DNA from: Antechinus flavipes
Lineage: Eukaryota
Direction of reading: 5' to 3'
NCBI RefSeq assembly: GCF_016432865.1
Contig: NC_067399.1
Location: 150,784,001-150,848,000, forward strand
DNA length: 64,000 bases
Shown: positions 31,201 to 64,000 of the stretch, in pieces
How positions within the stretch are numbered: position 1 is the stretch's first letter
Layout of the letters: every line of letters begins with the position of its first letter
The notes under the pieces: model-generated
What the model was told of the DNA's origin: nothing
Seen by the model: the letters and a program-made list of their open reading frames with translations, nothing else
Databases searched by the model: none
Position numbers and translations under genes: made by a program

Positions 31201-33469
31201 ATGCTTTCTAGTTTTCTTAACAATTTTTACCAAATTATGAATTCCTATCGTAAAGGCATAAATTCTTAAACTTGTCAAATAGAAGGTTATTATATTAACT
31301 TGCTACTATAAATGATATATCTATTTCATTCATCTACCTTTCGATTTCTTAGCCAGTGCCAGATAGTTTTGATAATTGTTGCCTTATAATACAGTTTAAG
31401 ATCTGATCCTGTTAAATTTCCTTTCTTTATACTTTTTCCCCCATTGCTTCCTTTGATATTCTAGATTTTTTTGTTTTTCCTAATGAATTCTGTTATTATT
31501 TTTTCTAATTCATTAAAGTAATTTTTGATAATTCAATTGGAATGGTATTGATATGTAAATATATAAATCAATGTGGGTAAAATTATATTGGCTTTTTCTA
31601 ACCATGAACAATTAATATTTTTTCAATTATTTAAATCCAGATAATGTTAATATATGATATGCATTCAAAGACATCCTTATGTACAGTTTAGTGGCCTCCA
31701 TTTCTATTTGATTTTAATAATTCATTGCTTTAGAGAAGTCATTGACTCTGGTACTGCAGTTAGCAACTATGCAATCACATATGTATGTGTGCATGCACGT
31801 ATGTGTGTATGTGTATGACATTCTAGTCCAAAAGAGTACCTTATTCTAGCTTCTATTTTTTCATTTCCCTCATTGTTAGCTCAGGTTTCAGAGAATGTTA
31901 TTATAAAGACCATATGTGGTTTTGAAATTTTAAATTTAAATGTGACCTTTTTTTGAATTTTGTTTGCTTTTAGATGATAATGTTAACTGGTATTCCAGTA
32001 GTGAAGAAGAAGAGGGAAGTAGTGTCAAATCAATATTGAAAACTTTACAGAAACAAACAGAGACTTTAAGGAATCAACAACATTCCACAGAACTTGGTAC
32101 TCCTACCGATCCAAGACTTGCTAAAGACAAAAATACAGGAAACCAAACTGTTGATCCTAGACTTAGGGCTGTCCCAAGACAAAGTGTTAGAAAACCTGAT
32201 TCTGCTCCTTTTGATCCTAGACTTGCCCGAGACCCCAGGAAATTAAAACTTAATGAAAGTAGTCACCCAAACCCTTGTATTGGTGGAGGAAAGTTTGACT
32301 TACACCATACAAATTCTGGAGCTAAAGTCAAACAAAAAGGAATAGATGAAGAAGAAGAAGAAACAGAAAGAGAACTGAGAGAAAAAGCTTTCCTAATACC
32401 TTTGGAATCTTTACCTGGTGTAACACTACAAGATCCAAGGTCTCAGCTTAGACAATTCAGCCATATTAAAATGGATATTATCCTGACCAAACCAAACTTT
32501 GCAAAATACATTGTATGGGCTCCTGAAGATTTACTTCCAGTACCCTTACCTAAACCTGACCCCATTTCATCAATTAACTTACCTCTTCCCCCACTTATAG
32601 CTGACCAGAGGCTAAATAAATTACGTAACATAAACAGTGATCTTCATCAGAGTACAATACCAGCTGATCCAAGATTAGCAGCAAAAGCCAAAAATAATAC
32701 TACAAGAAGTGGATATTTGGACCAACCTGGAGAAACCCATAGTCCAGGAAATAAATTAGGAGATCCTAGGTTGCAAAAAAATATTGATCCTAGACTTCAT
32801 AGGCTGTCCAGTACAGATTCTCATCATGGGATTGCAAAGGATCCTCATCCATCAAAATTTGATCCACGTTTGTCCAGACCTAGTCCTGGTTCATCACAGA
32901 CTTCAGGGGCAGTAACTAATAAATCTGAGTCTGATTCTCTTCCTCCATATGCTCCTAAACTCTCAGCTTCAACTGGTATTAGACTAGGAACACCAAGTTC
33001 TATACTTAGTGGCATTAGTTTGTATGACCCAAGGGAACATGGTTCATTGTCTTTATCAGATTCAACACCACTTTCTTTAGGAGAGAATGGAGAGAACCAG
33101 AGAAAAATCAGTGGCTTACAAAACAATGGCAAAATTGAGCTTTCTCCTTCAGAAGCTTTTCAAAAGACCACTCAAAATTTGGAAAAGACTACAGATGGGC
33201 CAGTTGATCCACAGTTGGATAAACAGAATACTATTAAGACTCAGGTTAAATCTGAGCCCCCACAACCTAGTACTGCACCAGCAGTGCACAACCTTCCAAT
33301 CCAGGCTTTAACAGGATTAATAAGACCACAGTACAGTGATCCAAGACAGACAAGACAGCTGGGACAGGTGAATCAAGCACCAGATAATGATCCAAATGGA
33401 GAATCAGATGATAAATCCCTGAAGGATGTTTTTAAAACTTTTGATCCAACAGCTTCACCATTTTGTTAG
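4055..33469 (+). CDS. ZC3H6: ZC3H6, zinc finger CCCH domain-containing protein 6; 5'-partial, join(4055-4307,5381-5514,12845-12961,13351-13462,14670-14779,19873-20126,23468-23979,29974-30207,31974-33469)
   Basis: Nine exons join in one open frame (3222 nt, 1073 aa + TAG) with consistent phases. Peptide has three CCCH fingers, [29 protein letters not shown] repeats and terminal [12 protein letters not shown], matching recalled mammalian ZC3H6. Confidence 0.97.
5333..5378. repeat. (AT)18 microsatellite plus T11 tract at a ZC3H6 acceptor
   Basis: Direct reading. Confidence 0.95.
5381..5514 (+). CDS. ZC3H6: ZC3H6 exon (about 5), RG-rich: [45 protein letters not shown]
   Basis: T11-AG acceptor, GAG|gtaata donor; 134 nt, phase 1 to 0. 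Confidence 0.93.
8140..9050 (+). mobile_element. L2 LINE remnant (RT end and 3' region)
   Basis: cttatttgacttttctgcagcatttaacact resembles the L2 LDLSAAFDT motif; pyrimidine-rich L2 body. Confidence 0.75.
11266..11301. repeat. (GT)n microsatellite
   Basis: Direct reading. Confidence 0.95.
11671..11905 (-). mobile_element. Partial ERV LTR, same family as 55225-55591
   Basis: Shares cctatctctctgcttggttccaagagctc..ccgaatgtc..ccaaatccaaagg with the 55.3-kb element; TG terminus at 11671; minus-strand AATAAA. Confidence 0.6.
12314..12469 (+). mobile_element. WSINE1-type SINE with (AAT)n tail
   Basis: ggcagctaagtgg..ccagccctgaagtcaggaggacctgagttcaaatc; candidate TSD ataattaa at 12306-12313 and 12470-12477. 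Confidence 0.85.
12845..12961 (+). CDS. ZC3H6: ZC3H6 exon (about 6), DGKPVKKW...[12 protein letters not shown] (start of CCCH finger 1)
   Basis: ttttattatag acceptor, AAG|gtaaag donor; 117 nt, phase 0 to 0. Confidence 0.96.
13351..13462 (+). CDS. ZC3H6: ZC3H6 exon (about 7), GDQCKFDH...[20 protein letters not shown] (finger 1 end, finger 2)
   Basis: ttcctcttgcataacag acceptor; ends CAT A|ATATCCTTT (U12 donor); 112 nt. Confidence 0.96.
13463..14669 (+). other. U12-type (minor spliceosome) AT-AC intron of ZC3H6, 1207 nt
   Basis: 5' end ATATCCTTT; branch site TTCCTTAAT at 14650-14658; ends AC at 14668-14669; removal restores [11 protein letters not shown] in frame. Confidence 0.96.
14670..14779 (+). 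CDS. ZC3H6: ZC3H6 exon (about 8), (N)[23 protein letters not shown]...LLDK (finger 3)
   Basis: Follows AC acceptor; AAA|gtaagt donor; 110 nt, phase 1 to 0. Confidence 0.96.
15150..18050 (+). mobile_element. Two tandem L2 LINE remnants (about 15150-16870 and 16920-18050)
   Basis: Long pyrimidine-rich L2 3' halves, each ending in a gtatcccc..cacatagtagg..aataaatg-type tail. Confidence 0.7.
18680..19720 (-). mobile_element. L2 LINE remnant
   Basis: Purine-rich antisense L2 body. Confidence 0.65.
19873..20126 (+). CDS. ZC3H6: ZC3H6 exon (about 9), VLNTEEE...[16 protein letters not shown]...HKIGK
   Basis: ttttcttttag acceptor, AA|gtaagt donor; 254 nt, phase 0 to 2. Confidence 0.96.
23468..23979 (+). 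CDS. ZC3H6: ZC3H6 exon (about 10), Pro/Gly/His-rich region
   Basis: tttttacag acceptor, G|gtaagt donor; 512 nt, phase 2 to 1; overlaps ORF 23541..24026. Confidence 0.96.
24021..24139 (+). repeat. 119-bp AT-rich direct repeat, copy 1 (copy 2 at 25258-25376)
   Basis: Identical except one base (tttgat vs ttcgat); offset 1237. Confidence 0.93.
25209..25256. repeat. (AC)n(AT)n compound microsatellite
   Basis: Direct reading. Confidence 0.95.
25990..26400 (-). mobile_element. CR1/L3 LINE RT fragment with embedded (AC)n/(AG)n
   Basis: Minus strand cttattaaatttgcagattacaca = LIKFADYT, the CR1-type FADD motif. Confidence 0.65.
27100..27950 (-). mobile_element. L2 LINE remnant
   Basis: Antisense L2 3' end (aacacttattaagcacc..ggctctgtgctaagg..ctctgccctcaagaagcttacag). 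Confidence 0.7.
29974..30207 (+). CDS. ZC3H6: ZC3H6 exon (about 11), DGMWHGEF...LSKEE
   Basis: catatag acceptor, G|gtaata donor; 234 nt, phase 1 to 1; overlaps ORF 29979..30254. Confidence 0.94.
31000..31640 (-). mobile_element. L1 ORF2 remnant
   Basis: ttgataattgttgccttataatacagtttaagatctg is the antisense of the PDxKLYYKAxIIKTIW motif. Confidence 0.7.
31974..33469 (+). CDS. ZC3H6: ZC3H6 terminal coding exon (about 12), DPR-repeat C-terminus ending FDPTASPFC-stop
   Basis: tttgcttttag acceptor; in frame with ORF 31964..33469; TAG at 33467-33469. Confidence 0.97.
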
Positions 33470-42759: not shown

Positions 42760-44830
42760 ACAAGCTTTTCCTAAAAGATCATTCTGCTGAGAATTGTGGG
42801 AAGCTGGCAGCATAATGGAAACCAGAAAGTCCATATCCTCCATATATACCCCAATAATGTTTTAAAATTTCACCAGGTGGGAAAATGATAAATAAAACCA
42901 AAGGCTGTTAATGCTTCTGTCCAAAGCAGAACAACACAAAAAGATCTGCTGTAATTCTGTAGAAGTTCAAAGAAGAAAGAAGAGGTAAATAGAAGACAAA
43001 GTGCAAAACAATTCAGTTCTATAGCAGTAGTCAGGAAAAGAGGAGCACCTGGCCCGTGGTAACTTTTAAGTACCCAGCAATGGCAAGCAACAGGGCTAGA
43101 CCAGTATCCAAGAAACTGTGCCCAATCCAAAACCCTCCAAAAAAGAATAACTCCGAATTCAAGTAAAGCCTCAGAGGAAAAGAATGTCCTGGCCAGAAGG
43201 ACTACAATACAAAAGTTACAAAATGAAAGAGCTAGGAAGGATAGAATGGCAAAAAAAAATATAATGTTTACAAATAGATAGTATTAAACCTTGTCCAAGA
43301 ATTGAGTCCCTGAAAATTAAAATGAGCCAAACAAAAAAAACAGGTACATGAGCCAACAAAGAATAGTACAATTAAAATGTTGACAGGTAAAAAAGGGGAA
43401 ATGCCACAAAATAATCCAAGAATCATCAGACTACCTGAAAATGACAATCTTCCCTCTACTCCACACCACCCTCAAGTTGTATTTTAAGATATCATAACTG
43501 AAAATTCCCTGGATCTTTTAGAACCAGAAGAGAAAGTTAAACATAGGAAGAATACAGAGATTACTCCCTGCAAGAAACCTTAAAATGAAAACTCCCAGGA
43601 ACATGATAACCAAAATTCAGAGCTTCCAGGTTAAAAAAAAAATAAAGCAAAGTTAGTTTAAGTGCCAAGGAGTCACAATAAGGATCACACAAGATCTGAC
43701 AGTGACCAGTATGAAGGTCAGGAGAGCTTGGAATATGATATTCCAAAAAGCACACTTACAAGCAAGAATAATTTATCCAGAAAAATAATAGAGTAGAATT
43801 CTAGTTAGGGTGGGTTAATGAAAATTAAAATATTTTCAAGCATTCCTGATATAAAGAAAAAATCTGAGTAAATTCTTTGAGATGGAAACACAATAAGGAA
43901 TAAACATTTATGTAGCACCTATTACATTCCAAGTACCATGAGACAAGAGCAACATAAAAATACAAACATCAGATATGGAAAGGAACTATATGATAATGGA
44001 AAAAGACACAAGTATCTTCTCAGAATCATAATGTCATAGAGAAGGTGATATATGATAGATGGCATTGGGGTGGGGTTTTTATGTCTTTAGGCAGAGGGAA
44101 ATAGGAGGGATAGGGAACTATACCGAAAAGTAAAGGAAAATAAAGGAAACAACTATCTTATATAAATAGGGTTGCATAAAGTGAAGAGTATATAGGCACA
44201 GAGGACCAGGCATTAATAATGCCTTTACCTAAATTATACAAAGGAAAGTGAAAAATACAAGCCTGCACACACACACACACACAAAACACTAATTGTGTTG
44301 TGNNNNNNNNNNNNNNNNNNNNNNNNNNNNNNNNNNNNNNNNNNNNNNNNNNNNNNNNNNNNNNNNNNNNNNNNNNNNNNNNNNNNNNNNNNNNNNNNNN
44401 NNNNNNNNNNNNNNNNNNNNNNNNNNNNNNNNNNNNNNNNNNNNNNNNNNNNNNNNNNNNNNNNNNNNNNNNNNNNNNNNNNNNNNNNNNNNNNNNNNNN
44501 NNNNNNNNNNNNNNNNNNNNNNNNNNNNNNNNNNNNNNNNNNNNAGAGAGACAGAGACAGAATATGAAAGGTTAGAGCAGATGAGAAGATAGAGCAGATG
44601 AGAAGATAGAGCAGTATAGGGGAAGGTTTAATCACAAAACAATAGGAAGGGGTGTGAAGAGGATATTAAAAGGAAAAAAGAAAAAAAAAAACCTTCAATT
44701 GAGTGGGAAAAGAGAGAAAGTGGAAAGGGAAAACAGATCATGTCCTAGAAAAGGGAGAAATAGCAAAGGGAGCAGAGTTAGCTTCCCACCCTTTAAATTA
44801 AGAACAGGGCTAACTTGAAATTATAATTCT
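42760..44830 (+). mobile_element. Degraded L1 (5' region, ORF1 and spacer), spanning the assembly gap
   Basis: 43420-43800 decodes to ORF1-like IIRLPE..ENSLDLLEPE..KTPRNMITKIQSFQVK with frameshifts. Confidence 0.7.
44303..44544. other. Assembly gap (242 N) between (CA)n- and (AG)n-rich flanks
   Basis: Direct reading. Confidence 1.
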
Positions 44831-51221: not shown

Positions 51222-51785
51222 TTAGGGGCAGCTAGGTGACACAGTAGATACAATGCTGATACTAGAAACTGAGTTCAAATTTGGTCTTAGATACTTACTA
51301 GCTGTGTAACTCTAGGCAAATTATTTAACTGTTTGCCTTAGTTTTCTCTTCTATAAAATAAGTTGGAGAAGGAAATGGCAAACCACTCTAATACCTTCCC
51401 CAAGAAACGAATGTGAACTATCTGCATTTTTGTTTTTCTTCCCGGGTTATTTATACCTTCTGAATCCAATTCTCCCTATGCAACAAGAGAACTGTTCGGT
51501 TCTGCAAACATATATTGTATCTAGGATATACTGCAACATATCCAACATATAAAGGACTGCTTGCCATCTAGGGGAGGGGGTGGAGGGAGGGAGGGGGAAA
51601 AAAATTGGAACAGGAAACGAGTGCAAAGGATAATGTTGTAAAAAAAAAAAATTACCCTGGCATGGATTCTGTCAATATAAAGTAATTATTAAATAAAAAT
51701 TAAAAAAAATAAATAAATACCTTCCCCAAGAAAATCCTCAAAAGAGTTTTGAAGAGTCAGATACAACTGAAAAACAACTAAACAA
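51222..51785 (+). mobile_element. MAR1-type SINE interrupted by a young L1
   Basis: Head at 51222; tail resumes after 51733. Confidence 0.75.
51408..51715 (+). mobile_element. 5'-truncated young L1 3' end with 18-bp TSD
   Basis: aataccttccccaagaaa at 51390-51407 and 51716-51733; A-rich tail. Confidence 0.9.
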
Positions 51786-53541
51786 CAAAATATATAAAAC
51801 TATATATAGGGAAGTATATATTATATCAATCAAATTCTTTTTTCTTTCTCTTTCTCTCTAACTCAGTTTCAATTGATCAAGAATGGACAGAAGCAGCAAC
51901 ACCCAAAGAAAGAACCCTGGGAAATGAATGTAAACTGTTTGCATTTTTGTTTTTCTGCCCAGGTTATTTATACCTTCTAAATCCAATTCTTCCTGTGCAA
52001 CAAGAGAACTGTTCGGTTCTACACACATATATTGTATCTAGGATATACGGTGACATATTCAACATGTATAGGACTGCTTGCCATCTGGGGGAGGGAGTGA
52101 AGGGAGAGAGGAGAAAAGTCCGAACAGAAGTGAAAGCAAGGGATAATGTTGTAAAAAAAATTATCCAGGAATGGGTTCTGTCAATAAAAAGTTATAATAA
52201 AAAAAGAAAAAAAAAAAGAATGAACATGTATAATCAACAAAAAAGACAAAGAAATCTAGTCTGTAAAAAAACTTAGCAACTCTGATCAACACAGCAAACC
52301 TCCACAATTCCAAAAAACTCGTGATGAAAAAATGATATCTACCTCCAGAGAGAAAACTAATAGACTCAGAATGCAAATTGAAAATAGATTTTTTTTCCTT
52401 TTTTTTTAAACATATAACTAATATAGAAATGTGTTTTGCATGACTTCATATTTATAGTGGGTTTCGTATTTCTTGCCTTTCCAATGAGTGGAGGTAGAGT
52501 TTGAATTAAGAAAAAAATCTGAAATGGATAATAAAATGTAACTTAATTTTAAATGATAATAATAGCACCTACCTTCTAGGATTATTATGAGGATTAAATG
52601 AAATATTTACTAAGTGCTATGTAAACCTTAAAGTGCAAGATAAATGCTAGTTAGCATAATTATGATTTGCTTTTATTTCCCTCTTTCATGCCTTATATGT
52701 AAATATTTACTCTTTGCAGCCAACTTTACATAGATAGTAGAATCAACTCCCATTCATACAAAGTCTTCACTAATTCAATTCAACAATTTAACAAACCACC
52801 TACTATATGCTAGTGCTAAGTGCTAAGGAGACAGACAAAAACGGGACAATCTTTAATTTCAGAAGAAGGGGAAGTTTTCTTCCATTCCACTGAGTGGAGT
52901 AAAATAACATATGGACAAGTGTAATCCATGGAAAACTGAGAAGAGGAAGAATAATAAGAGATTGGGAAGGGAATCAGGAAAGGTAACAATCAAAGCGTTT
53001 ATCAAGTGTTTACTATGTACCAAGCACTGTGCTAAGGGCTAGATATGTAAAGACAAAAAAGACAGGCCCTGCTTTTAACTGGTTCACAGCCTAATGGGGA
53101 AAATAAAATGCAAATTACACATACAGCATATATTGGAGATAATCACCAGAAGACAATAGCATTAAGAGGGGAGAGTATGTGACTAGGAAAGGCTTCATGG
53201 AGAAGACAACCACAGATGAGACCTGAAGGAAGCCAAGAAAATCAGGAGGTGGAAATGAGAAGAGAAAGGAATACAGATATGGGAATTGCAAATGAAAATG
53301 CCTGGAGTCAGGAAATGGTGACCTAGGAACAGAAAATAAGTAGGAAGAGGCCATGTTATGAAGGTCTTTCTTTTTTACAAGCTTCTCATTTTCAAAACAT
53401 ATACATAGATTGTTTTCAACATTTACCGTTGCAAAACCTTATGTTCCAAGTTTTTTTTTCTCACATCCTTCTCTCCATCTCCTCCCCTAGATGGCAAGTA
53501 ATCCAATATATGTAAAACGTGTAATTCTTCTGTACAAATTT
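51665..53541 (+). repeat. 1.88-kb near-identical duplication, copy 1 (copy 2 at 55592-57471)
   Basis: Offset 3927 rising to 3930; I count 5 substitutions and 2 homopolymer indels. Confidence 0.95.
51862..52218 (+). mobile_element. L1 3' end with poly(A) (second copy about 55789-56146)
   Basis: gatcaagaatggacagaagcagc...ctgtcaataaaaagttataataaaaaaa. Confidence 0.85.
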
Positions 53542-53830
53542 CCACAATTATCTTGCTACACAAGAAAAATTAGATCAAAAAGGGAAAAAATGAGAAAGAA
53601 AACAAAATCTAAGCAAACAACGAAAGTGAAAATACTATGTTGTGATCCACACTCGGTCCCTACTGCCTCTCTGCCTCTGACAGTGCAAATGGATGCAGAT
53701 GGCATTCTTCATCACAAGACCATTGGAACTCCCTGAGTCACCTTGCTGTTGAAAAGAGCCACATCCATCAGAATTGATTATCATATAATTTTTGCTGTTG
53801 CTGTGTACAATGTTCTCTTGATTCTTTGTA
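53367..53830 (-). mobile_element. L1 3' UTR fragment inserted in an antisense L2 (about 52990-54270)
   Basis: Same antisense L1 3' end as 27-420. Confidence 0.8.
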
Positions 53831-54649: not shown

Positions 54650-54655
54650 TTTATT
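54650..54655 (-). terminator. Candidate poly(A) signal for the VINAC1-like gene
   Basis: AATAAA on the minus strand about 350 nt after the stop; lies in an old L2-like tail. Confidence 0.3.
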
Positions 54656-55004: not shown

Positions 55005-55199
55005 TTAAGTGGTCCATGGTTCTTGAACCATGGACACAAGTGTGGGAGCTTTGTTTGCTGCTGTCTTGCGTAGTCCAGACTCATCTAGGTCTGCATTTGA
55101 TGCTTCTTCAGATCTGTGCTTTAGCAACTCTCTTTTCCATTGCATGCAGAAGGCTGCTGCCTCCATTTCATCTGCATCTAGAAGAGGTTCCCTTAAGCC
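55005..55199 (-). CDS. VINAC1: VINAC1-like terminal coding exon: GLREPLLDADEMEAAAFCMQWKRELL...QEPWTT-stop
   Basis: Minus strand: gtctcatctccag|GGC; phase 0; equals ORF 55005..55214 minus its first five intronic codons; FCMQWKR resembles vinculin FTLRWVRK. Confidence 0.85.
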   Translation of the reverse strand, partial: GLREPLLDADEMEAAAFCMQWKRELLKHRSEEASNADLDESGLRKTAANKAPTLVSMVQEPWTT

Positions 55200-58100
55200 C
55201 TGGAGATGAGACACACATAATTAAAGTCTGCTTTTATAAGAAGTTGTATCCAAATGTAGCCCGGTTAGCTTAGAGACCTATCTCTCTGCTTGGTTCCAAG
55301 AGCTCTCTCCGAATGTCACCAAATCCAAAGGTCTGGACCTTCAGCCTCTGCCTCTGCTTTCTTCAGCCTCCAGCCAGCTCCAGTCTTCATGTCATTCCGG
55401 TGAAATCTCGACTTGTAGCGTCTTCCTCTCTCCAGAACTCTCCAACTGGCCCATTGGCCTATTTATGCTCCTTCCAGAGAGAGGGATTATGGGTAGTTCT
55501 ACTTAGTACCTTGTTTCAGGTTCTGCCCAAAACATCTTTTTGTAAGATTAGATCAACTCTAACTACTTAGCAGTTAGTGAGGATTCCAACAGATTCTGTC
55601 AATATAAAGTAATTATTAAATAAAAATTAAAAAAAATAAATAAATACCTTCCCCAAGAAAATCCTCAAAAGAGTTTTGAAGAGTCAGATACAACTGAAAA
55701 ACAACTAAACAACAAAATATATAAAACTATATATAGGGAAGTATATATTATATCAATCAAATTCTTTTTTCTTTCTCTTTCTCTCTAACTCAGTTTCAAT
55801 TGATCAAGAATGGACAGAAGCAGCAACACCCAAAGAAAGAACCCTGGGAAATGAATGTAAACTGTTTGCATTTTTGTTTTTCTGCCCAGGTTATTTATAC
55901 CTTCTAAATCCAATTCTTCCTGTGCAACAAGAGAACTGTTCGGTTCTACACACATATATTGTATCTAGGATATACGGTGACATATTCAACATGTATAGGA
56001 CTGCTTGCCATCTGGGGGAGGGAGTGAAGGGAGAGAAGAGAAAAGTCCGAACAGAAGTGAAAGCAAGGGATAATGTTGTAAAAAAAATTATCCAGGAATG
56101 GGTTCTGTCAATAAAAAGTTATAATAAAAAAAGGAAAAAAAAAAAGAATGAACATGTATAATCAACAAAAAAGACAAAGAAATCTAGTCTGTAAAAAAAC
56201 TTAGCAACTCTGATCAACACAGCAAACCTCCACAATTCCAAAAAACTCGTGATGAAAAAATGATATCTACCTCCAGAGAGAAAACTAATAGACTCAGAAT
56301 GCAAATTGAAAATAGATTTTTTTTCCTTTTTTTTTTTAAACATATAACTAATATAGAAATGTGTTTTGCATGACTTCATATTTATAGTGGGTTTCGTATT
56401 TCTTGCCTTTCCAATGAGTGGAGGTAGAGTTTGAATTAAGAAAAAAATCTGAAATGGATAATAAAATGTAACTTAATTTTAAATGATAATAATAGCATCT
56501 ACCTTCTAGGATTATTATGAGGATTAAATGAAATATTTACTAAGTGCTATGTAAACCTTAAAGTGCAAGATAAATGCTAGTTAGCATAATTATGATTTGC
56601 TTTTATTTCCCTCTTTCATGCCTTATATGTAAATATTTACTCTTTGCAGCCAACTTTACATAGATAGTAGAATCAACTCCCATTCATACAAAGTCTTCAC
56701 TAATTCAATTCAACAATTTAACAAAGCACCTACTATATGCTAGTGCTAAGTGCTAAGGAGACAGACAAAAACGGGACAATCTTTAATTTCAGAAGAAGGG
56801 GAAGTTTTCTTCCATTCCACTGAGTGGAGTAAAATAACATATGGACAAGTGTAATCCATGGAAAACTGAGAAGAGGAAGAATAATAAGAGATTGGGAAGG
56901 GAATCAGGAAAGGTAACAATCAAAGCGTTTATCAAGTGTTTACTATGTACCAAGCACTGTGCTAAGGGCTAGATATGTAAAGACAAAAAAGACAGGCCCT
57001 GCTTTTAACTGGTTCACAGCCTAATGGGGAAAATAAAATGCAAATTACACATACAGCATATATTGGAGATAATCACCAGAAGACAATAGCATTAAGAGGG
57101 GAGAGTATGTGACTAGGAAAGGCTTCATGGAGAAGACAACCACAGATGAGACCTGAAGGAAGCCAAGAAAATCAGGAGGTGGAAATGAGAAGAGAAAGGA
57201 ATACAGATATGGGAATTGCAAATGAAAATGCCTGGAGTCAGGAAATGGTGACCTAGGAACAGAAAATAAGTAGGAAGAGGCCATGTTATGAAGGTCTTTC
57301 TTTTTTACAAGCTTCTCATTTTCAAAACATATACATAGATAGTTTTCAACATTTATCGTTGCAAAACCTTATGTTCCAAGTTTTTTTTTCTCACATCCTT
57401 CTCTCCATCTCCTCCCCTAGATGGCAAGTAATCCAATATATGTAAAACGTGTAATTCTTCTGTACAAATTTGTACCAATTACTTCTATTTCACATCACAA
57501 ATTACAAAGTTTATTTGAGGGGATAGTTCATTCTGCTTCTCAGAATACCAAAATTGTTATTTATAGTTGTAAGTAGCAAAGCCAGAATTCAGATCCTCCT
57601 CCCACTCTTTTCCTAAGCAACACATTGCTTATTTTTGATTCTTAAATAAATTCAAAGTACGTTATAGTCTAACAAGTAAACAGCAATTGTTAGCAAAAAA
57701 CAATTTATTGCAATAGGAAGCTATCAGATAAACTTTATCTTCTTCCCAGCTACTGTACAAGTGAAATCCAACTCCCCATCACTCATGTTCTAGGATCTCC
57801 CTTCCTGCTCAACTGAATTTGTACCAATTACTTCTATTTCACATCACAAATTACAAAGTTTATTTGAGGGGATAGTTCATTCTGCTTCTCAGAATACCAA
57901 AATTGTTATTTATAGTTGTAAGTAGCAAAGCCAGAATTCAGATCCTCCTCCCACTCTTTTCCTAAGCAACACATTGCTTATTTTTGTTTTTTAAATAAAT
58001 AGTAGGATTAATTATTCAGGCAAAAAAGCATTTATTGAGTGTCTAATTATATGCTATGCTTATGTGTTATGCCTTGCTATGTAAGGCAAAAAATGCCTTA

Positions 58101-61100
58101 GCTTCATCTTATGAGACTTAAACTCTACTAGTGAATAGTAATTTCTTGTGTAATCTCAAAGTCTGATGAAAAGGAAGGAATCTGGGAAGGCAACCTAGCT
58201 ATCACAGTTCAAATCCCTCCACCAATGGGTAATAAAGAAAACTCAAAAGTGATGCGATTTGAATGCTCTCAGTTCCTGGTAGTCAAGAGATTAGTGGCCA
58301 TAAGAGAATTGTAAAATACCTCTTTAAATGGGCCGCTGGTTTAGGAGTGAAAGAATCCACTCATTCCTGAATTATTAGTTGCAAAATGAAAGTTTATTGT
58401 TGGATAGAAATCAGTTTGCTAAGGGACTGACTTCTATAGTGGCAAAGACGTATTAAGGAAATGGAGTTTTGGCACTGAGAATGCTTTCTCAGCGAACAGA
58501 AGGGTCCTGGCAGTTGAGTAAGCTATCTAGGGCCATCTGCAAAGGGCTTAGTTGAGGGAAGCTGTTATATTGGGTATCTTGATGGGGGCTGGGACAGTAC
58601 AAGCTGATCAAACCAGAATTCCTCAATTGAATGAGAATTTAGAATTTCTATGGGAGTTGATTTGCCCCTGAATACTATTGCTTCTCTTATCCTGGAAGGA
58701 TGGGGTTCTGTCTAGATTCCTTGGAGCCTGGGAGATCCTGATGTCTGTGATCAAAAATGGGGACACAACCTCTAAGAGCAATAATCTTAAAGGGAACAAA
58801 ACTTAACAGTTTCCCTCCCCCTTCAAAAGGATCTGAAATTCAACTTTATCAATCATATTCCATGTTGATAACTCCAATGAAAGGTTCAATTAGGAGATAG
58901 AATCAGCATAATTGTCCACAATGAAGTCTGTGAATTTTTAGTAGGTTTTAGTGATCCGGATCACTCACAAGCCATTCTCCCTCGACCTCAAATCAAAGAG
59001 CTGGCTGGATTTCACTGGCAGGAATCAGTTACATGACTAGCATCAAAAAAGTCCTTCATACTTACTCGGAGACATGCTGCTTCTGCTGCCTTTAAAGTGT
59101 GCAAAACACCCTGGAGGAGGTTCTGGGCATTGTTCACAAGGAGCTCTTCAGAGGACTTGCTGCTTGCTAGAGCTGCTTTGACGCTTGAAAAAAGAGAAAA
59201 ATGCTGTGGTATATTTAAATGATGAAATTTAGTTCAAACCAAATAAAAAGAAGACAAGCTATAATACAAAAAACTTTACCAATTTGTTTCCTGGCTACTG
59301 AGAAGATGTTACAAAAACAGGCAGAAAAAGAATATTCCTGATTTATTTTTCATGAGTTGTGAGATTTATAGCTGCTTTTGGGGGCACTAAAATTAGGTGA
59401 GGTACAGTAGAAAAGAGATTGGAAGTGGAAGACCCGAGTCCAATTCTAGCTCTGCTATGTGTGATTTGGGGCCTTTAAAGGTTCTTTTAAAGACTCAGAT
59501 ACTTCATGGTTGTATGACCTTGACTAAGTTACTTAAATGCCAGAATGTATTGAACTTTCCAAAAAATGTTAAGGATAAGAAAATTTTTCTGAGCTACTTT
59601 CCAATAAATACATTTTTAAATAATAAATTAGTTTCAAGAGAAGAGATACATTCCTATGTAATCATGGGATTAAATGTTCCAAATTACTCATAAAAGAGAA
59701 ATATATATTAAAACAGCCAGTGTGGCCATATTTGAATCCAAGAGATGAATCTTACTGACTTCAGGTTCAGTGTTCTACCTCACAACAACTCTGGGAAGTG
59801 GATGTTATTATTATCTCCATTTTACAAGTGAGAAAACTGAGACAAACTTGCTAATTAGTGTTTGGGGTTGGATTTTAATTCAGCAAGTCTTCCCTTAGTC
59901 TGGACCCAGTGCTTTATTCACTGAAGCATAAAAATAATTGTTTTAAAAAAAAAAAAATCACAGCAATCTATAAAGCTTTTCAGTTGGTTCGCTGCTCTCT
60001 GCTACCATCTGCTGACCTGTCACTGCTAAGCACCCTCTGCAGGCTGAGAGGCAGAGCTCTTTTAGGAACAAATGTGTACTACAGCCTAGGGTTATCACAG
60101 CTTGCCCGACCAGGCTGCCAATTGCCTACAGAAACCCTCAGGCTTAGATTGTCGATCTTTTCTAAACTTTTTTTTTCTTACTGGTACTTAAGAGTCCATT
60201 TAAGCTATTAACTATTATAATAGAAAATAACTTACCTTTTATCATAACCTTTGGTCTCTTCTCTGGGTCCCCTTCAAATTTTCATTTAGGAAAACTTCAA
60301 GGAAACTAAGTTGAGCTGCAGAATGTCCTTTTTTTTTTTTCTGAGGTAATTGGGGTTAAGTGACTTGCCCAAGGTCACACCGAGGATATGTTAGGTGTCT
60401 GAGGTCAGATTTGAACTTAGGTCCCCCTGACTTCAGGGCTGGTGCTCTATTCATTGCGCCACTTAGCTGCCCCTAAAATGTCTTTTTTAACATAAAGTCA
60501 ACTCAAGAGCAAAACTTTAAAGACCCTCAGGCAACTTTGTCCTACTTTCTATTAGCAACCAAAATCACAGTGCTCCCTCCTAACATGTTGTTGAGCATTT
60601 TGCTCTCACATTACTAAGCTGAATGAATGAATGAATGAATGAATGTGTAAGGATGGGGTGCACCCCACTTATAGTAAGTTTCAAACTGCTCAATCAATCA
60701 ACTCACCCTTCCATGTTATAAATGAAAACCCTGGCTCTCCATAGCCTAAAACAAGTCAAAAAGCTTGATGCTACTTTTGTTCCAATAAATTTACAATTCT
60801 GGTGAAAGCTTTAAATGGGGGGGCTGAGTTTCTATGGTTGTTTTTTTTTTTTTTAATCTTTCACTATGTTGATTTCAGCCACCATCCACAGTAAGACAAA
60901 ATATGAACCAAGTGTTTTCTTTGGTAAGTGGTAAACAAGGACAAGATAATTCATGGTTGTCAAGTGAAATGAAATAAAACAACCCAGAGAAGAAAAAAAC
61001 AAGGATTTAGACATCTTTTTTAAAACATTTTTTCCAGCCCTTCAGGGGAAAGCAGCTTGAGGAAAAAAAAAAATAACAACACTTTAGTTTTTCAGAAGTG

Positions 61101-61281
61101 CTCTTTACCTGGAAATGATGTTGAGTTGGCTACTCATTGTCTGAATTTGTTCCAACACACACAAGAGTTCATCTGCACATCTCTGATCCAGGCAGTTCTT
61201 AGCAACGAGGCGGATGAATTTAACAAACTTGTGTCCAGAAGTAGCTGTTTTCTTTGCAGAGGCAATTAATTGGGCTTTGGT
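55005..61281 (-). CDS. VINAC1: Vinculin/alpha-catenin family protein, 3' part (vinculin tail-like domain), 5'-partial; complement(join(55005-55199,59066-59183,61109-61281))
   Basis: Three GT-AG exons join in frame (486 nt, 161 aa + TAA). Segments TKAQLIASAK..VAKNCLDQR..QLNIISSVKA and LLVNNAQNLLQGV..AAEAA align with the recalled vinculin tail. Position tail-to-tail with ZC3H6 fits recalled mouse Vinac1 (Gm14025) synteny; the symbol rests on that recollection. Confidence 0.85.
55225..55591 (-). mobile_element. ERV LTR remnant next to the VINAC1 terminal acceptor
   Basis: Minus strand begins TGTTGGAA at 55591; CATAAATA box at 55460-55467; homology to 11671-11905. The left boundary is uncertain. 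Confidence 0.6.
57467..57651 (+). repeat. 185-bp direct repeat, copy 1 (copy 2 at 57816-58000)
   Basis: Offset 349; two mismatches near the right end. Confidence 0.93.
58310..58825 (-). mobile_element. Solo ERV LTR, same family as 45553-46442
   Basis: Minus strand TGAAG...TTACA; AATAAA at plus coordinates 58393-58398. Confidence 0.75.
59066..59183 (-). CDS. VINAC1: VINAC1-like exon: (S)VKAALASSKSSEELLVNNAQNLLQGVLHTLKAAEAACLR
   Basis: Minus strand: tttttctcttttttcaag|C GTC ... CGA|gtaagt; 118 nt, phase 2 to 0. Confidence 0.9.
60329..60473 (-). mobile_element. WSINE1-type SINE
   Basis: Poly-T, then antisense WSINE1; aatgtc(c)tttttt TSD-like flanks. Confidence 0.85.
61109..61281 (-). CDS. VINAC1: VINAC1-like exon: TKAQLIASAKKTATSGHKFVKFIRLVAKNCLDQRCADELLCVLEQIQTMSSQLNIIS
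   Basis: Minus strand: cactttctttgatgtag|ACC ... TCC AG|gtaaag; 173 nt, phase 0 to 2. Confidence 0.9.
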
Positions 61282-63089
61282 CTACATCAAAGAAAGTGAA
61301 GCTGTTAGAAGGAGCAGACCCAAGTAAAGTGGATTTTTAAAGGTGTTTTCTACAAGGCAGGTGGGATAGTTCTGAAGTCTTTCAAAAGCTTCTTTTGCTA
61401 GACTTTCCTCAACTACAGAATTAAAAGGGAAATTATGCTTTGTCTTTCAACACAGGTTTTTCTGAGGAGAGTCTCCCCTAAAATAGTAGACTCAGAGGGC
61501 CTAAGGAACAATCTTTTTACTGACTTTCAAGGCCTGTGATTAATAAGAAAACTACCCTTCCAAAAATCTACTGGAGAAAGATATGGCTGCCATTTTCCCT
61601 GAAGGAACTGTACCAAGACATGCTAAGACTTTATCTTTATGATCTTGTTTTTACTTTTTGTTTTTTGAAATTTGAAACCAAAGGGGGGGAAAAAAGAAAT
61701 TTCAGACCAATTCTAATAAAGTTTGAGGGCTTGTAGACACATAAACTCTTTCAAAAGCAGTAATTTTGTTTACTGTTCAACAATATCAACTTTGGGTATA
61801 TATGGCAAAATGAGACTGAGAAAAGGAGGAAATGTTTAAGGAAGTAAAATTCTATAATCTGACCATTAAAAGGAAATAAACATTATACCAAAAAACATCT
61901 ATATACACACACACTTGAAGGCTGAAAATAACTTTCATCATGGAATGGCTTTTTTGAGCCAATCATCCTTACTATCTGACCCAATGAAATGGCTGAAGGC
62001 ACAGCATTATTCTTATAAAAGGAGTATGAAATCCAATATTTTATCTAGGGTTTAGGAATAGTTGCTGCCCAGGGCCAAAGATCTAGATTTTCACTATATA
62101 TCACCTGCCTGATGACTCTACCTTCTCTATTCTTCTGAGAGACTATCACCAATGTTCAGGTAATTGTTCTTAAAAATGTGTCCCATTTGGCAGCTTCAAC
62201 TGCACTGAGATTTTTGAGATAACCTATATTACCAATTCTGTTTCATTGGCATTAACAGCAGACAAGAATAAGAAGAACAATTGAAATCCACAGAAGATCT
62301 GAATATTGAACTTGAGAAATTACTGTCAGTTTAGTAATAAGGATTATAGATAAAGTTAGTTCCACTAAGGGATTCAAATTAACTAATCTGAAATTCATTC
62401 CTTTGTATATTCTAGCCAGAAATAAAAGGGCCAGTGAGGAAAGTCCTGAATTTGGATTCACAAGGCCAGAATTAAAATTCCAGCTCTTGCTCTCTCGATT
62501 TTAAATAAGTGCAACCTCTGTTGTCAGCTTCCTCATCCATAATGTGAATGTTGGATGATATGACCTCCAAGATCCAGTTCCAAATCTATGAGCCATGATT
62601 CTAAGTCTATAGAAAAAGACCAATTTCTCAATCTTCCAGTGCTTAATTTTGTGTTTAATGTAAAAAAATATTAAGTCAATGAATAAGCCAATAAAATTTA
62701 CTTGACTTATACTCATCTAGGAGAAAATAGCAGAAAGATCTCAGGAACCAACTTCTTCCTGATTGAATATATGGAAAAATTAATTTTCTTAATTAAAGAA
62801 GACCAAGATTATCTATTAAGATAGGTTAAAATTAATCTATCTTAATTTTAGAAAAATCTACCTCATATTTTTCAGTGGTTCAGATATAAAGAGTCCTTGA
62901 CCACATTACTATCCTATTATTATTCTTTTATATTTATTATTTTATAGGCTGTAGCACAAGTAGATAAAATGACTGCTTTTAATAGCTATCTTCTACAGGT
63001 TCAGTGAAAATATTTTTGATACAACTCCAGGAGTAGAAAGCATAACAGCTACTTCACTCTTTTCATTCCCACATGATTTTTGTTTCTGC

Positions 63090-64000
63090 TGTAATAGTGC
63101 ATATATTTTCATTTTTATTCTTGGTAGATAGTGTGAGATATTGGTCTATGCCTGATTTCTGCCATAATATTTCCACTTTTGTGGAAACATTTGTCAAATA
63201 AAGAGTTTTTGTTCCAAATACTTAGATCTTTGGGTTTCTTATGTCCTAGATTATTATGGTCATTTGACTATAATGTAATTTGTACTTAATGTATTCCACT
63301 AATTCACCACTTTGCTTCTTTAGTTGGTACCAGATTGTTTTGATAATTACCAGTTTATAATACAGTTTGAGATCTGGTACTGTTAGTTCACCTTCCTTCA
63401 CATTTTCCTTAATATCTTTGAACTTTTGTTTTTCTGGGTAAATTTTGTGATCATTTTTTCTAGCTCTATAAAAATTTGGGGAGATAATTTGATCGGTATG
63501 GCATTGAATCAATAGATTAATTTATGTAGAATTCTCATTTTTATTACACTGGCATGAACCACTCATGAACAATTAATATTTTTCTGGTTGTTTACATCTG
63601 ACTCTATTTGTTTAAAAAGTGCTTTATTGTTGTGTTTATATAGGTCCTGAGTTGGTCTTGGCAGGTAGATTTCCAAGTATTTTATATTGTCTATGATTAT
63701 TTTAAATGAAATTGCTCTTCCTATCCCTTACTGCTGAACTTTATTGGTAATATATAGAAATGCTAATGATTTATGTGATCTTATTTTGTATCCTGCAACT
63801 TTGCTAAATTAGTTAATAATTTCAAGCATTTTTTAAGTTGATTCTCTAGGATTCTGTAAGTATAACATCATATCATCAGCAATGAGTGATAGTTTTGTTT
63901 CCTCATCGCCTATTCTAATTCCTTCAATTTCTTTTTCTTCTCTTATTGCTGGGGCCAATATTTATAATATAATATTAAAGAATAGAAGATATCATTGGCA
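63090..64000 (-). mobile_element. L1 ORF2 remnant (RT C-terminal region)
   Basis: ORF 63246..63512 contains GELTVPDLKLYYKLVIIKTIWY. Confidence 0.85.

What the first reader, a model, noticed from the sequence alone, without database searches (positions are those of the whole stretch)
55005..61281. Hidden intact vinculin-tail gene (VINAC1-like) on the minus strand, convergent with ZC3H6
Seen: three short exons among LTR/SINE/L1 debris have canonical splice sites, matching phases (0-2, 2-0, 0-stop) and no stops over 161 codons; only the last appears in the ORF track. The first 62 aa align without gaps to the recalled human vinculin tail at 27 identities, and LLVNNAQNLLQGV..AAEAA matches MLVHNAQNLMQSV..EAEAA. 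Positions equivalent to vinculin I997 and V1001, established F-actin-binding residues, are retained (QLNIISSVK vs QLKILSTVK), while several basic residues are neutralised (K996>N, R978>A, R987>Q). Recalled knowledge: mouse Vinac1/Gm14025 lies beside Zc3h6, human has a pseudogene, and function is essentially uncharacterised. Inference: marsupials keep a functional additional vinculin/alpha-catenin family actin-binding adaptor with altered lipid binding.
Basis: partly seen in the sequence, partly recalled or inferred. Interest (0 to 1): 0.85.

Follow-up and report, generated by a model that had tools for sequence, protein, structure and literature searches.

The report
Last three exons of marsupial VINAC1
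The three minus-strand exons are the real, selectively conserved last 161 codons of VINAC1, a named but unstudied relative of vinculin and alpha-catenin, in a dasyurid marsupial; the gene is already annotated in related species and kept across vertebrates, so the find is correct but ordinary.

Summary
Exons at 61281-61109, 59183-59066 and 55199-55005 (minus strand) have AG/GT splice sites and phases 0-2, 2-0 and 0-stop. They give 161 stop-free codons. Exon 1 alone passes the Pfam Vinculin (PF01044) cut-off, and exon 2 continues the same profile.

The spliced product aligns end to end, without gaps, to the C-termini of annotated 1407-1519 aa proteins:
- Tasmanian devil, 98.1% identity
- fat-tailed dunnart, 97.5%
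- wallaby and koala, 91.3%
- rat Vinac1, 67%

Exon boundaries are the same in four marsupials and, at protein-alignment resolution, in rat and a bird. The tail-to-tail neighbour ZC3H6 is also conserved. dN/dS across five marsupials is about 0.15-0.25, and omega=1 is rejected at P~1e-8.

So this is the 3' end of the VINAC1 orthologue. Only 3 of about 6 coding exons lie in the window. The gene is not hidden in related genomes, and retention is not special to marsupials.

The tail most likely forms an alpha-catenin/vinculin-type F-actin-binding helical bundle. It also carries a family-specific C-terminal extension that is conserved from sponges to mammals. Actin binding and altered lipid binding are inferred, not shown.

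The parts
61109..61281 (-). Exon E1, the third-last coding exon of VINAC1. It carries 57 codons plus 2 nt. It corresponds to vinculin residues 943-999 (tail helices H3-H4) and includes the conserved QLNIIS motif.
   Evidence: (PF01044 42.1 bits). Identical boundaries and AG/GT sites in devil, dunnart, wallaby and glider.
59184..61108 (-). Intron 1 of the tail, 1925 nt. The same intron is 5.1 kb in devil, 11.4 kb in dunnart and 8.7 kb in wallaby.
   Evidence: Alignable at 90-94% to the devil intron ends.
59066..59183 (-). Exon E2, the penultimate coding exon. It carries 1 nt plus 39 codons: the end of H4, a short loop and H5.
   Evidence: PF01044 23.9 bits, profile 799-829. One search shows the H4-H5 loop is 8 residues shorter than in vinculin.
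55200..59065 (-). Intron 2 of the tail, 3866 nt. It is enlarged by an extra copy of 3'-flank DNA at 55592-57481.
55005..55199 (-). Exon E3, the last coding exon: 64 codons plus TAA. It encodes the family-specific C-terminal extension (AAFCxQWK..L..HR...D..GLRKT....PTL).
   Evidence: No Pfam or PDB hit on its own. Conserved from fish to mammals and in invertebrate relatives. dN/dS 0.16-0.21.
54650..54655 (-). First AATAAA after the stop, 350 nt downstream. A candidate poly(A) signal; a second candidate, ATTAAA, lies at 54460-54455.
   Evidence: Pattern only, not verified by reads.
51665..53550 (.). 3'-flank block whose 99.4-99.6% identical direct copy sits in intron 2 at 55592-57481.
   Evidence: Single copy in devil, dunnart and wallaby.
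31964..33469 (+). Large terminal coding exon of ZC3H6, the convergent neighbour. Its stop lies 21.5 kb from the VINAC1 stop.
   Evidence: The same tail-to-tail pair is found in ruff and rat.

Best explanation
The three exons are the 3' end (last 161 codons) of the VINAC1 orthologue (vinculin/alpha-catenin family member 1) of a dasyurid marsupial. By synonymous divergence the species is closer to Tasmanian devil than to dunnart. The gene is an ordinary protein-coding gene under purifying selection, and it lies tail to tail with ZC3H6.

Shown: the identity of the gene, its exon structure, its synteny and the selective constraint.

Inferred: E1 and E2 encode helices H3-H5 of a C-terminal helical bundle of the vinculin-tail / alpha-catenin actin-binding-domain type. 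That bundle most likely binds F-actin through the H4-H5 face, where the motif QLxIISSVKA keeps the equivalents of vinculin I997 and V1001. E3 adds a roughly 64-residue family-specific extension. Its first half is predicted helical, and its QWK...HR...GLRKT...PTL motif is conserved across Metazoa. By analogy with the C-terminal extension of alpha-catenin, it plausibly tunes actin or partner binding. The full protein (about 1400-1475 aa in relatives, with a vinculin-like head) would then be a cytoskeletal adaptor.

My odds: identity and coding constraint about 0.9; F-actin binding by the tail about 0.55.
For: Family and orthology:
- PF01044 hits on E1 and E2.
- Best hits are devil, dunnart, wallaby, koala, glider and opossum proteins, then rat Vinac1.
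- The 161 aa align end to end without gaps to their C-termini at 98.1, 97.5, 91.3 and 66.9% identity.
- Exon boundaries and AG/GT sites are identical in four marsupial loci. The three-exon split is the same, at protein-alignment resolution, in ruff and rat.
- The convergent ZC3H6 neighbour is present in the window, ruff and rat.

Selection:
- Pairwise dN/dS is 0.09-0.25, with Fisher P down to 3e-10. It is also low for E3 alone.
- The ML codon model gives omega 0.25. Omega=1 is rejected, 2dlnL=36.2, P~1e-8.
- Exons are 97.7-100% identical to devil, against 90-94% for the introns.

Structure:
- By sequence, the PDB relatives are the vinculin tail and the alpha-catenin ABD, E 1e-16 to 1e-18.
- An AlphaFold model of the 98%-identical devil tail has pLDDT 77-90 over four long helices plus an extra helix in E3.
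- Foldseek top hits are the alpha-E-catenin ABD on F-actin and the vinculin tail.
- Q109, L110 and V116 are invariant, and I112 and K117 nearly so, in 21 vertebrate tails.
Against: - No transcript or junction-read evidence was obtained for this species.
- The other coding exons lie beyond base 64000. An upstream disruption in this species cannot be excluded.
- The window-to-devil branch carries only 8 substitutions, so a very recent loss of constraint would be invisible.
- The structure model is of moderate quality (mean pLDDT 71, pTM 0.63, TM 0.4-0.65). H1 is not modelled.
- About half of vinculin's basic-ladder residues are replaced, and the H4-H5 loop is shorter, so the binding properties may differ.
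- Actin binding has never been tested for any VINAC1 protein.
Confidence: 0.88

Rival explanations
1. The gene is real and constrained, but the tail is not an F-actin binder. The helical bundle plus its conserved C-terminal extension would instead serve as a protein- or lipid-binding module, or as an autoinhibitory module. An example is head-tail closure, as in vinculin, without actin engagement.
For: E3 has no counterpart in vinculin or alpha-catenin, yet it is the family's signature. Several vinculin basic residues are neutralised: R945>A, K956>T, K975>Q, R978>A, R987>Q and K996>N. The H4-H5 loop is 8 residues shorter. The modelled extra helix may occupy part of the bundle surface.
Against: The best-conserved stretch of the whole tail is exactly the H4 segment that contacts actin in vinculin and alpha-catenin, and both key hydrophobic positions are kept. 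The closest structures are actin-bound ABDs.
Confidence: 0.3
2. In this species VINAC1 is a recently inactivated pseudogene, and its last three exons simply have not decayed yet.
For: Only 161 of about 1400 or more codons are visible. There is no read evidence. Intron 2 carries a lineage-specific 1.9 kb duplication.
Against: The two closest relatives have full-length ORFs of 1407 and 1473 aa. All splice sites are intact. Window versus devil shows 5 synonymous and 3 non-synonymous changes, omega 0.17, P=0.017. The duplication leaves E3 and its acceptor untouched.
Confidence: 0.07
3. The exons belong to vinculin, an alpha-catenin or alpha-catulin proper, or are a chance or transposon-derived ORF.
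For: PF01044 covers all of these families. UniProt auto-names several relatives 'Vinculin' or 'Catenin alpha-2'.
Against: Identity to vinculin is 27 of 62, against 67-98% to VINAC1 proteins. E3 finds nothing among PDB vinculin or catenin chains. Synteny with ZC3H6 and the exon structure match VINAC1. The proteins named 'Catenin alpha-2' carry the VINAC1 C-terminal motif.
Confidence: 0.01

Closest known systems
Rodent Vinac1 (vinculin/alpha-catenin family member 1; formerly Gm14025 / RGD1561442) and the 'uncharacterized protein LOC...' orthologues in devil, dunnart, wallaby, koala, glider and opossum
   Same: The C-terminal 161 aa are colinear without gaps. The three-exon split of the tail is the same. 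The C-terminal extension motif is the same. The convergent ZC3H6 neighbour is the same. Pfam Vinculin hits cover both head and tail.
   Different: Nothing of kind. Identity is 98% to devil, 91% to wallaby and 67% to rat. Intron sizes differ, and this genome has an extra 1.9 kb duplicate block in intron 2.
Vinculin tail domain (Vt; PDB 1qkr, 3jbi, 4pr9)
   Same: Homologous helical bundle, E~1e-16. Gapless over vinculin 943-1004. I997, V1001, K944, K952, R976 and K1002 are kept.
   Different: Only about 43% identity. The H4-H5 loop is 8 residues shorter. R945, K956, K975, R978, R987 and K996 are not basic. Vinculin ends about 20 residues after H5, whereas VINAC1 has a 64-residue extension with no detectable similarity.
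Alpha-E/N-catenin actin-binding domain (PDB 6dv1, 6wvt, 6upv, 7utj, 4k1o)
   Same: Top structural matches and top sequence matches for E1. QLNI(C/I)S is nearly identical. Both have a long C-terminal extension containing a Trp followed by basic residues.
   Different: Identity is about 30-35%. The extension motif (HR...GLRKT...PTL) is not found in alpha-catenin. The whole VINAC1 protein is about 500 aa longer, and in devil it is encoded largely by one 3.36 kb exon.
'Uncharacterized alpha-catenin-like clade' of Miller et al. 2013, as cited in PMC4948710 and PMC13245172
   Same: A third, unstudied, pan-metazoan branch of the superfamily. VINAC1-type tails with the same extension motif occur in a sponge, a coral-like sequence, a crinoid and a nemertean.
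   Different: The identity of the two clades is my inference. The 2013 paper is not held, and no tree with bona fide vinculin or catenin outgroups was built here.

Membership tests
Vinculin/alpha-catenin superfamily (Pfam PF01044) | Significant match to the PF01044 profile above the gathering score | tested here: met
   E1 alone scores 42.1 bits against a cut-off of 38.1. E2 scores 23.9 bits on the adjoining profile positions. Full-length wallaby orthologue: 269.8 bits.
Vinculin/alpha-catenin superfamily (Pfam PF01044) | C-terminal antiparallel helical bundle like Vt or the alpha-catenin ABD | tested here: met
   Tested on the devil tail, which is 98% identical to the window part. AF2 helices at 31-50, 59-86, 90-120 and 124-154, with pLDDT 77-90. 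Foldseek probability 1.00 to the alpha-catenin ABD and vinculin tail, TM up to 0.65. H1 is not modelled and the model quality is moderate.
Vinculin/alpha-catenin superfamily (Pfam PF01044) | F-actin binding by the tail | not testable with these tools
   Only residue conservation is available (I997 and V1001 equivalents).
VINAC1 orthologous group | Closest similarity to named Vinac1 and its orthologues rather than to VCL or CTNNA | tested here: met
   67% gapless identity to rat Vinac1 and 88.8-98% to marsupial orthologues. Identity to vinculin is about 43%.
VINAC1 orthologous group | Family-specific C-terminal extension (FCxQWK..L..HR...D.LGLRKT...PTL) | tested here: met
   E3 carries it. C172 is invariant, and W175, H182, R183, G196, L197, R198, P206 and L208 are nearly invariant, in 21 vertebrate tails. 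It is also present in invertebrate relatives.
VINAC1 orthologous group | Conserved position: convergent with ZC3H6 | tested here: met
   Window: ZC3H6 last exon at 31964-33469 (+). The same pair lies 4.5 kb apart in ruff and 8.1 kb apart in rat.
VINAC1 orthologous group | Same exon boundaries in the tail | tested here: met
   Identical boundaries with AG/GT sites in devil, dunnart, wallaby and glider. The same three blocks appear in ruff and rat.
VINAC1 orthologous group | Full-length open reading frame in this genome | not testable with these tools
   Only the last three coding exons lie in the window. The devil's previous exon is 7.9 kb upstream of E1, and the window has 2.7 kb there.
VINAC1 orthologous group | Transcribed and spliced as predicted in this species | not tested
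Vinculin proper (VCL) | Short C-terminal arm ending about 20 residues after H5, and the vinculin-length H4-H5 loop | tested here: not met
   Alignments to vinculin stop at the end of H5. E3 has no PDB hit. The loop is 8 residues shorter.

The most novel reading that the evidence does not exclude
VINAC1, whose signature tail is encoded here, may be the vertebrate representative of an ancient pan-metazoan fourth branch of the vinculin/alpha-catenin superfamily. It would be defined by a roughly 60-residue C-terminal extension (QWK...R...GLRK...PxL) conserved from sponges to mammals. In this reading it acts as a still-unknown actin-linked adaptor that is kept under purifying selection in most vertebrates.
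Probability: 0.5. Interest if true: 0.5.

Novelty: already known. Interest (0 to 1): 0.25.

Why it matters
For this window it is an annotation point. The 3' end of a real gene lies where a simple ORF track shows almost nothing. It is convergent with ZC3H6, and its model is now anchored by orthologues.

More broadly, VINAC1 is a conserved and constrained member of the family that links adhesion receptors to actin, and it has no functional study. The papers found only list it in expression or m6A tables, and one states that it lacks a characterised role. The family-specific C-terminal extension and the retained actin-contact motif give a concrete, cheap hypothesis to test. That opportunity belongs to the gene family as a whole, not to this marsupial locus.

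Tried and rejected
- Read evidence: the look-up of sequencing runs listed RNA-type runs holding 5-9% of the words. So there is no junction, depth or DNA-copy evidence.
later showed a 99.5% twin at about 52567-52609.
- Spliced marsupial transcripts via short proteins: none found. Only short annotated isoforms from other taxa turned up.
- Upstream exons in 61282-64000: none. That stretch holds only L1-like fragments.
- Rfam on 57000-64000: nothing.
- Atlas search for the ZC3H6 exon: only a weak 'Zc3h4' lead. It was superseded.
- Pfam on the ZC3H6 exon: nothing.
- A tree with true vinculin, alpha-catenin and alpha-catulin outgroups was not built. The low-scoring hits I named all turned out to be VINAC1-like, and no bona fide outgroup sequence could be brought in without typing it.
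- Miller et al. 2013 and the sponge vinculin paper are not held.
- Scan notes have nothing on vinculin in this genome.
- Complex prediction was not used. Actin is not available as a reference, and no binding claim rests on it.
Full report
**1. The observation**

On the minus strand, three exons were read and translated:
- E1, 61281-61109: 173 nt, acceptor ...gatgtag|ACC, donor CAG|gtaaag.
- E2, 59183-59066: 118 nt, acceptor ...ttcaag|C, donor CGA|gtaagt.
- E3, 55199-55005: acceptor ...tctccag|GGC, TAA at 55007-55005.

The phases are 0-2, 2-0 and 0-stop. The spliced CDS is 486 nt, that is 161 codons plus the stop, with no internal stop. Only E3 appears in a mechanical ORF list.

Pfam PF01044 (Vinculin family) hits E1 at 42.1 bits, above the 38.1 cut-off, on profile positions 727-783. 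It hits E2 at 23.9 bits on positions 799-829. E3 has no hit.

Against PDB sequences, E1 matches alpha-catenin ABDs and vinculin tails at E~1e-5, gapless to human vinculin 943-999. On the residue alignment I count 27 identities over the first 62 residues.

**2. What it is**

An exhaustive profile-free search with E1 returned 55 hits at E up to 0.001. The best, as named, were:
- a 355 aa Tasmanian devil protein (96% identity over E1);
- a 1475 aa tammar wallaby protein (91%);
- a series of roughly 950-1760 aa 'uncharacterized' proteins of eutherians, a turtle and frogs, plus a gar protein labelled CTNA1.

A search with the wallaby tail found further orthologues:
- marsupials: devil (1407 aa), koala, fat-tailed dunnart (LOC141553289, 1473 aa), sugar glider, brushtail possum and opossum;
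- rat 'Vinac1 / Vinculin/alpha-catenin family member 1' (1414 aa);
- many rodents, monkeys, a gibbon, carnivores, whales, bats, an elephant, birds, turtles, an alligator, snakes, frogs, a newt, lungfish, sturgeon and cyprinids.

The spliced 161 aa of the window align end to end, without a single gap, to the extreme C-termini of these proteins:

| Species | Identity |
|---|---|
| devil | 98.1% |
| dunnart | 97.5% |
| wallaby, koala | 91.3% |
| opossum cluster | 90.1% |
| sugar glider | 88.8% |
| rat Vinac1 | 66.9% over 157 aa |
| turtles, birds | about 60-62% |

I fetched the loci of devil, wallaby, dunnart and glider. In all four, the three exons have the same lengths, the same boundaries and AG/GT sites. 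The same three-block structure is seen in ruff and rat.

The plus-strand ORF 31964-33466 is the large terminal exon of ZC3H6; every named hit is ZC3H6. CCCH fingers lie further upstream. In ruff and rat, a roughly 1200 aa CCCH gene lies on the opposite strand 4.5 and 8.1 kb past the VINAC1 stop. Its last exon is 70% and 63% identical to the window's ZC3H6 exon.

Sequence, exon structure and synteny therefore all identify the window's exons as the 3' end of the VINAC1 orthologue. The host is a dasyurid. Synonymous divergence is 0.047 to devil and 0.077 to dunnart.

Only these three coding exons are in the window. tblastn with the devil and dunnart proteins finds nothing else. The 2.7 kb upstream of E1 holds only L1-like fragments. 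In devil the previous exon is 7.9 kb upstream of E1.

**3. Is it under constraint?**

- Nei-Gojobori dN/dS for all ten pairs among window, devil, dunnart, wallaby and glider is 0.09-0.25. Fisher P runs from 0.017 for the closest pair (8 changes) down to 3e-10.
- E3 alone, the part without any Pfam support, gives 0.16-0.21 with P<=4e-4.
- A GY+F3X4 codon model on the five sequences estimates omega 0.25. A model fixed at omega=1 is worse by 2dlnL=36.2, P~1e-8.
- Exons are 97.7-100% identical to devil, against 90-94% for the alignable introns and flanks.

The third criterion, spliced transcripts, could not be examined. I kept those places out of every later search. RNA-type runs holding 5-9% of the words exist but remain unread.

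**4. How it most likely works**

Shown by sequence and model:
- The devil tail (218 aa, three differences from the window in the shared part) matches vinculin tails, alpha-catenin ABDs and the sponge VIN1 at E 1e-16 to 1e-18.
- With a 21-sequence alignment, AlphaFold gives four long helices with pLDDT 77-90. It also gives a further helix over the first half of E3. Mean pLDDT is 71 and pTM 0.63.
- Foldseek's best matches are alpha-E-catenin ABD bound to F-actin, alpha-N-catenin ABD, and vinculin/metavinculin tails.
- E1 and E2 thus encode helices H3-H5.
- The best-conserved stretch of the family is QLxIISSVKA. Q, L and V are invariant, and I and K nearly so, in 21 vertebrate tails. The stretch is also kept in invertebrate relatives. 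It is the H4 segment that carries vinculin I997 and V1001.

Inferred: the tail binds F-actin in the vinculin/alpha-catenin manner. My odds are about 0.55.

Differences from vinculin:
- The H4-H5 loop is 8 residues shorter.
- About half of the basic-ladder positions are not basic: R945>A, K956>T, K975>Q, R978>A, R987>Q and K996>N. K944, K952, K970, R976 and K1002 are kept.
- Vinculin's short C-terminal arm is replaced by a 64-residue extension that has no detectable match in PDB or Pfam.

That extension is the family's signature...AAFCxQWK..L..HR..E......D.LGLRKT....PTL. C172 is invariant and W175, H182, R183, G196, L197, R198, P206 and L208 are nearly so.

The extension itself is rich in basic residues.

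**5. Comparison with what is known, and novelty**

Vinac1 (formerly Gm14025) is a named gene. The library holds it only in gene lists: heart DEGs, a lung m6A peak at mouse chr2:129.04 Mb, and oligodendrocyte DEGs. The last of these remarks that it 'lacks a characterized functional role'. Searches give the full search results.

Full-length models are already annotated in devil, dunnart, wallaby, glider and opossum, with a shorter one in koala. So the gene is 'hidden' only in the sense that a prokaryote-style ORF track cannot show spliced exons. Its retention is general among vertebrates, not a marsupial feature. I file the locus as already known.

One wider point came out in passing. Proteins of 1300-1600 aa carry the same tail and the same C-terminal motif in the sponge Oscarella lobularis, a coral-like transcript, the crinoid Antedon and the nemertean Tubulanus. 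VINAC1 therefore looks like an ancient metazoan branch. It is possibly the 'uncharacterized alpha-catenin-like clade' mentioned in PMC4948710 and PMC13245172. I could not verify that identity, because the source paper is not held and no outgroup tree was possible.

**6. Verdict**

The gene identity, the intact constrained tail and the conserved actin-contact residues hold. Novelty, marsupial specificity and the lipid inference do not hold or are untested.
- Interest is low to moderate (0.25). This is a correct re-discovery of the 3' end of an annotated orthologue. Its only wider appeal is that the whole family is functionally unexplored.

- The N run at 44303-44544 was left alone.
- Places 56497-56539 were not sent to any tool.

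Noticed in passing
window 55592-57481 and 51665-53550: A 1.89 kb direct duplicate, 99.4-99.6% identical. One copy lies in intron 2 of the VINAC1 tail. The other lies in the 3' flank, 1.45 kb past the stop. The block is single copy in devil, dunnart and wallaby. It explains why intron 2 is 3.9 kb here against about 1.8 kb in devil. It is either a recent duplication or an assembly artefact.
   Followed up: partly
L001:14191-17550 (Tasmanian devil VINAC1 locus): Residues 64-1183 of the 1407 aa protein are encoded by one 3.36 kb exon. The gene has only about 6 coding exons, unlike the many-exon vinculin and alpha-catenin genes as I recall them. This suggests large-scale intron loss in the body of the gene, while the tail keeps its introns.
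   Followed up: partly
P0001 (devil, 355 aa), P0181 (turtle, 356 aa), P0182 (blue whale, 266 aa): These are short annotated isoforms. The devil model, which I read, joins the N-terminal part directly to the tail exons and skips the giant exon. The turtle and whale models look the same by length and tail coverage only. They may be real head-less/tail-only isoforms or annotation artefacts.
   Followed up: no
P0144 (Oscarella), P0140 (coral-like, Logan), P0052 (Antedon), P0031 (Tubulanus), P0143 (JGI metagenome): Invertebrate relatives, mostly 1300-1660 aa (the Antedon model is 485 aa), share the VINAC1-type tail and the C-terminal motif QWK..R..EA...GLR+....P.L. This implies a pan-metazoan clade distinct from vinculin and alpha-catenin.
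   Followed up: partly
P0028 'catenin alpha-2 [Polymixia lowei]', P0034 'Vinculin [Liparis tanakae]'; by name only: P0012, P0081, P0109, P0112, P0124: P0028 and P0034 carry the VINAC1 C-terminal motif. Others named catenin alpha-1/-2 score as VINAC1 tails. These database names look like mislabels.
   Followed up: partly
window 59184-61108 versus L001, L003, L002: Intron 1 of the tail is 1.9 kb here, but 5.1 kb in devil, 11.4 kb in dunnart and 8.7 kb in wallaby. Only the intron ends align. This points to large lineage-specific insertions or deletions.
   Followed up: no
window 63249-63961, minus strand: Stop-free stretches resemble LINE-1 ORF2 fragments, judged by eye. They lie upstream of E1, in the intron that leads to the previous VINAC1 exon.
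   Followed up: no
window 13405-13461 and 14681-14740, plus strand: Two CCCH zinc-finger motifs of ZC3H6 flank the interval 13463-14669. I did not examine the intron type.
   Followed up: no
window 44303-44544: A run of 242 N (assembly gap or masked stretch), between ZC3H6 and VINAC1. Left untouched.
   Followed up: no
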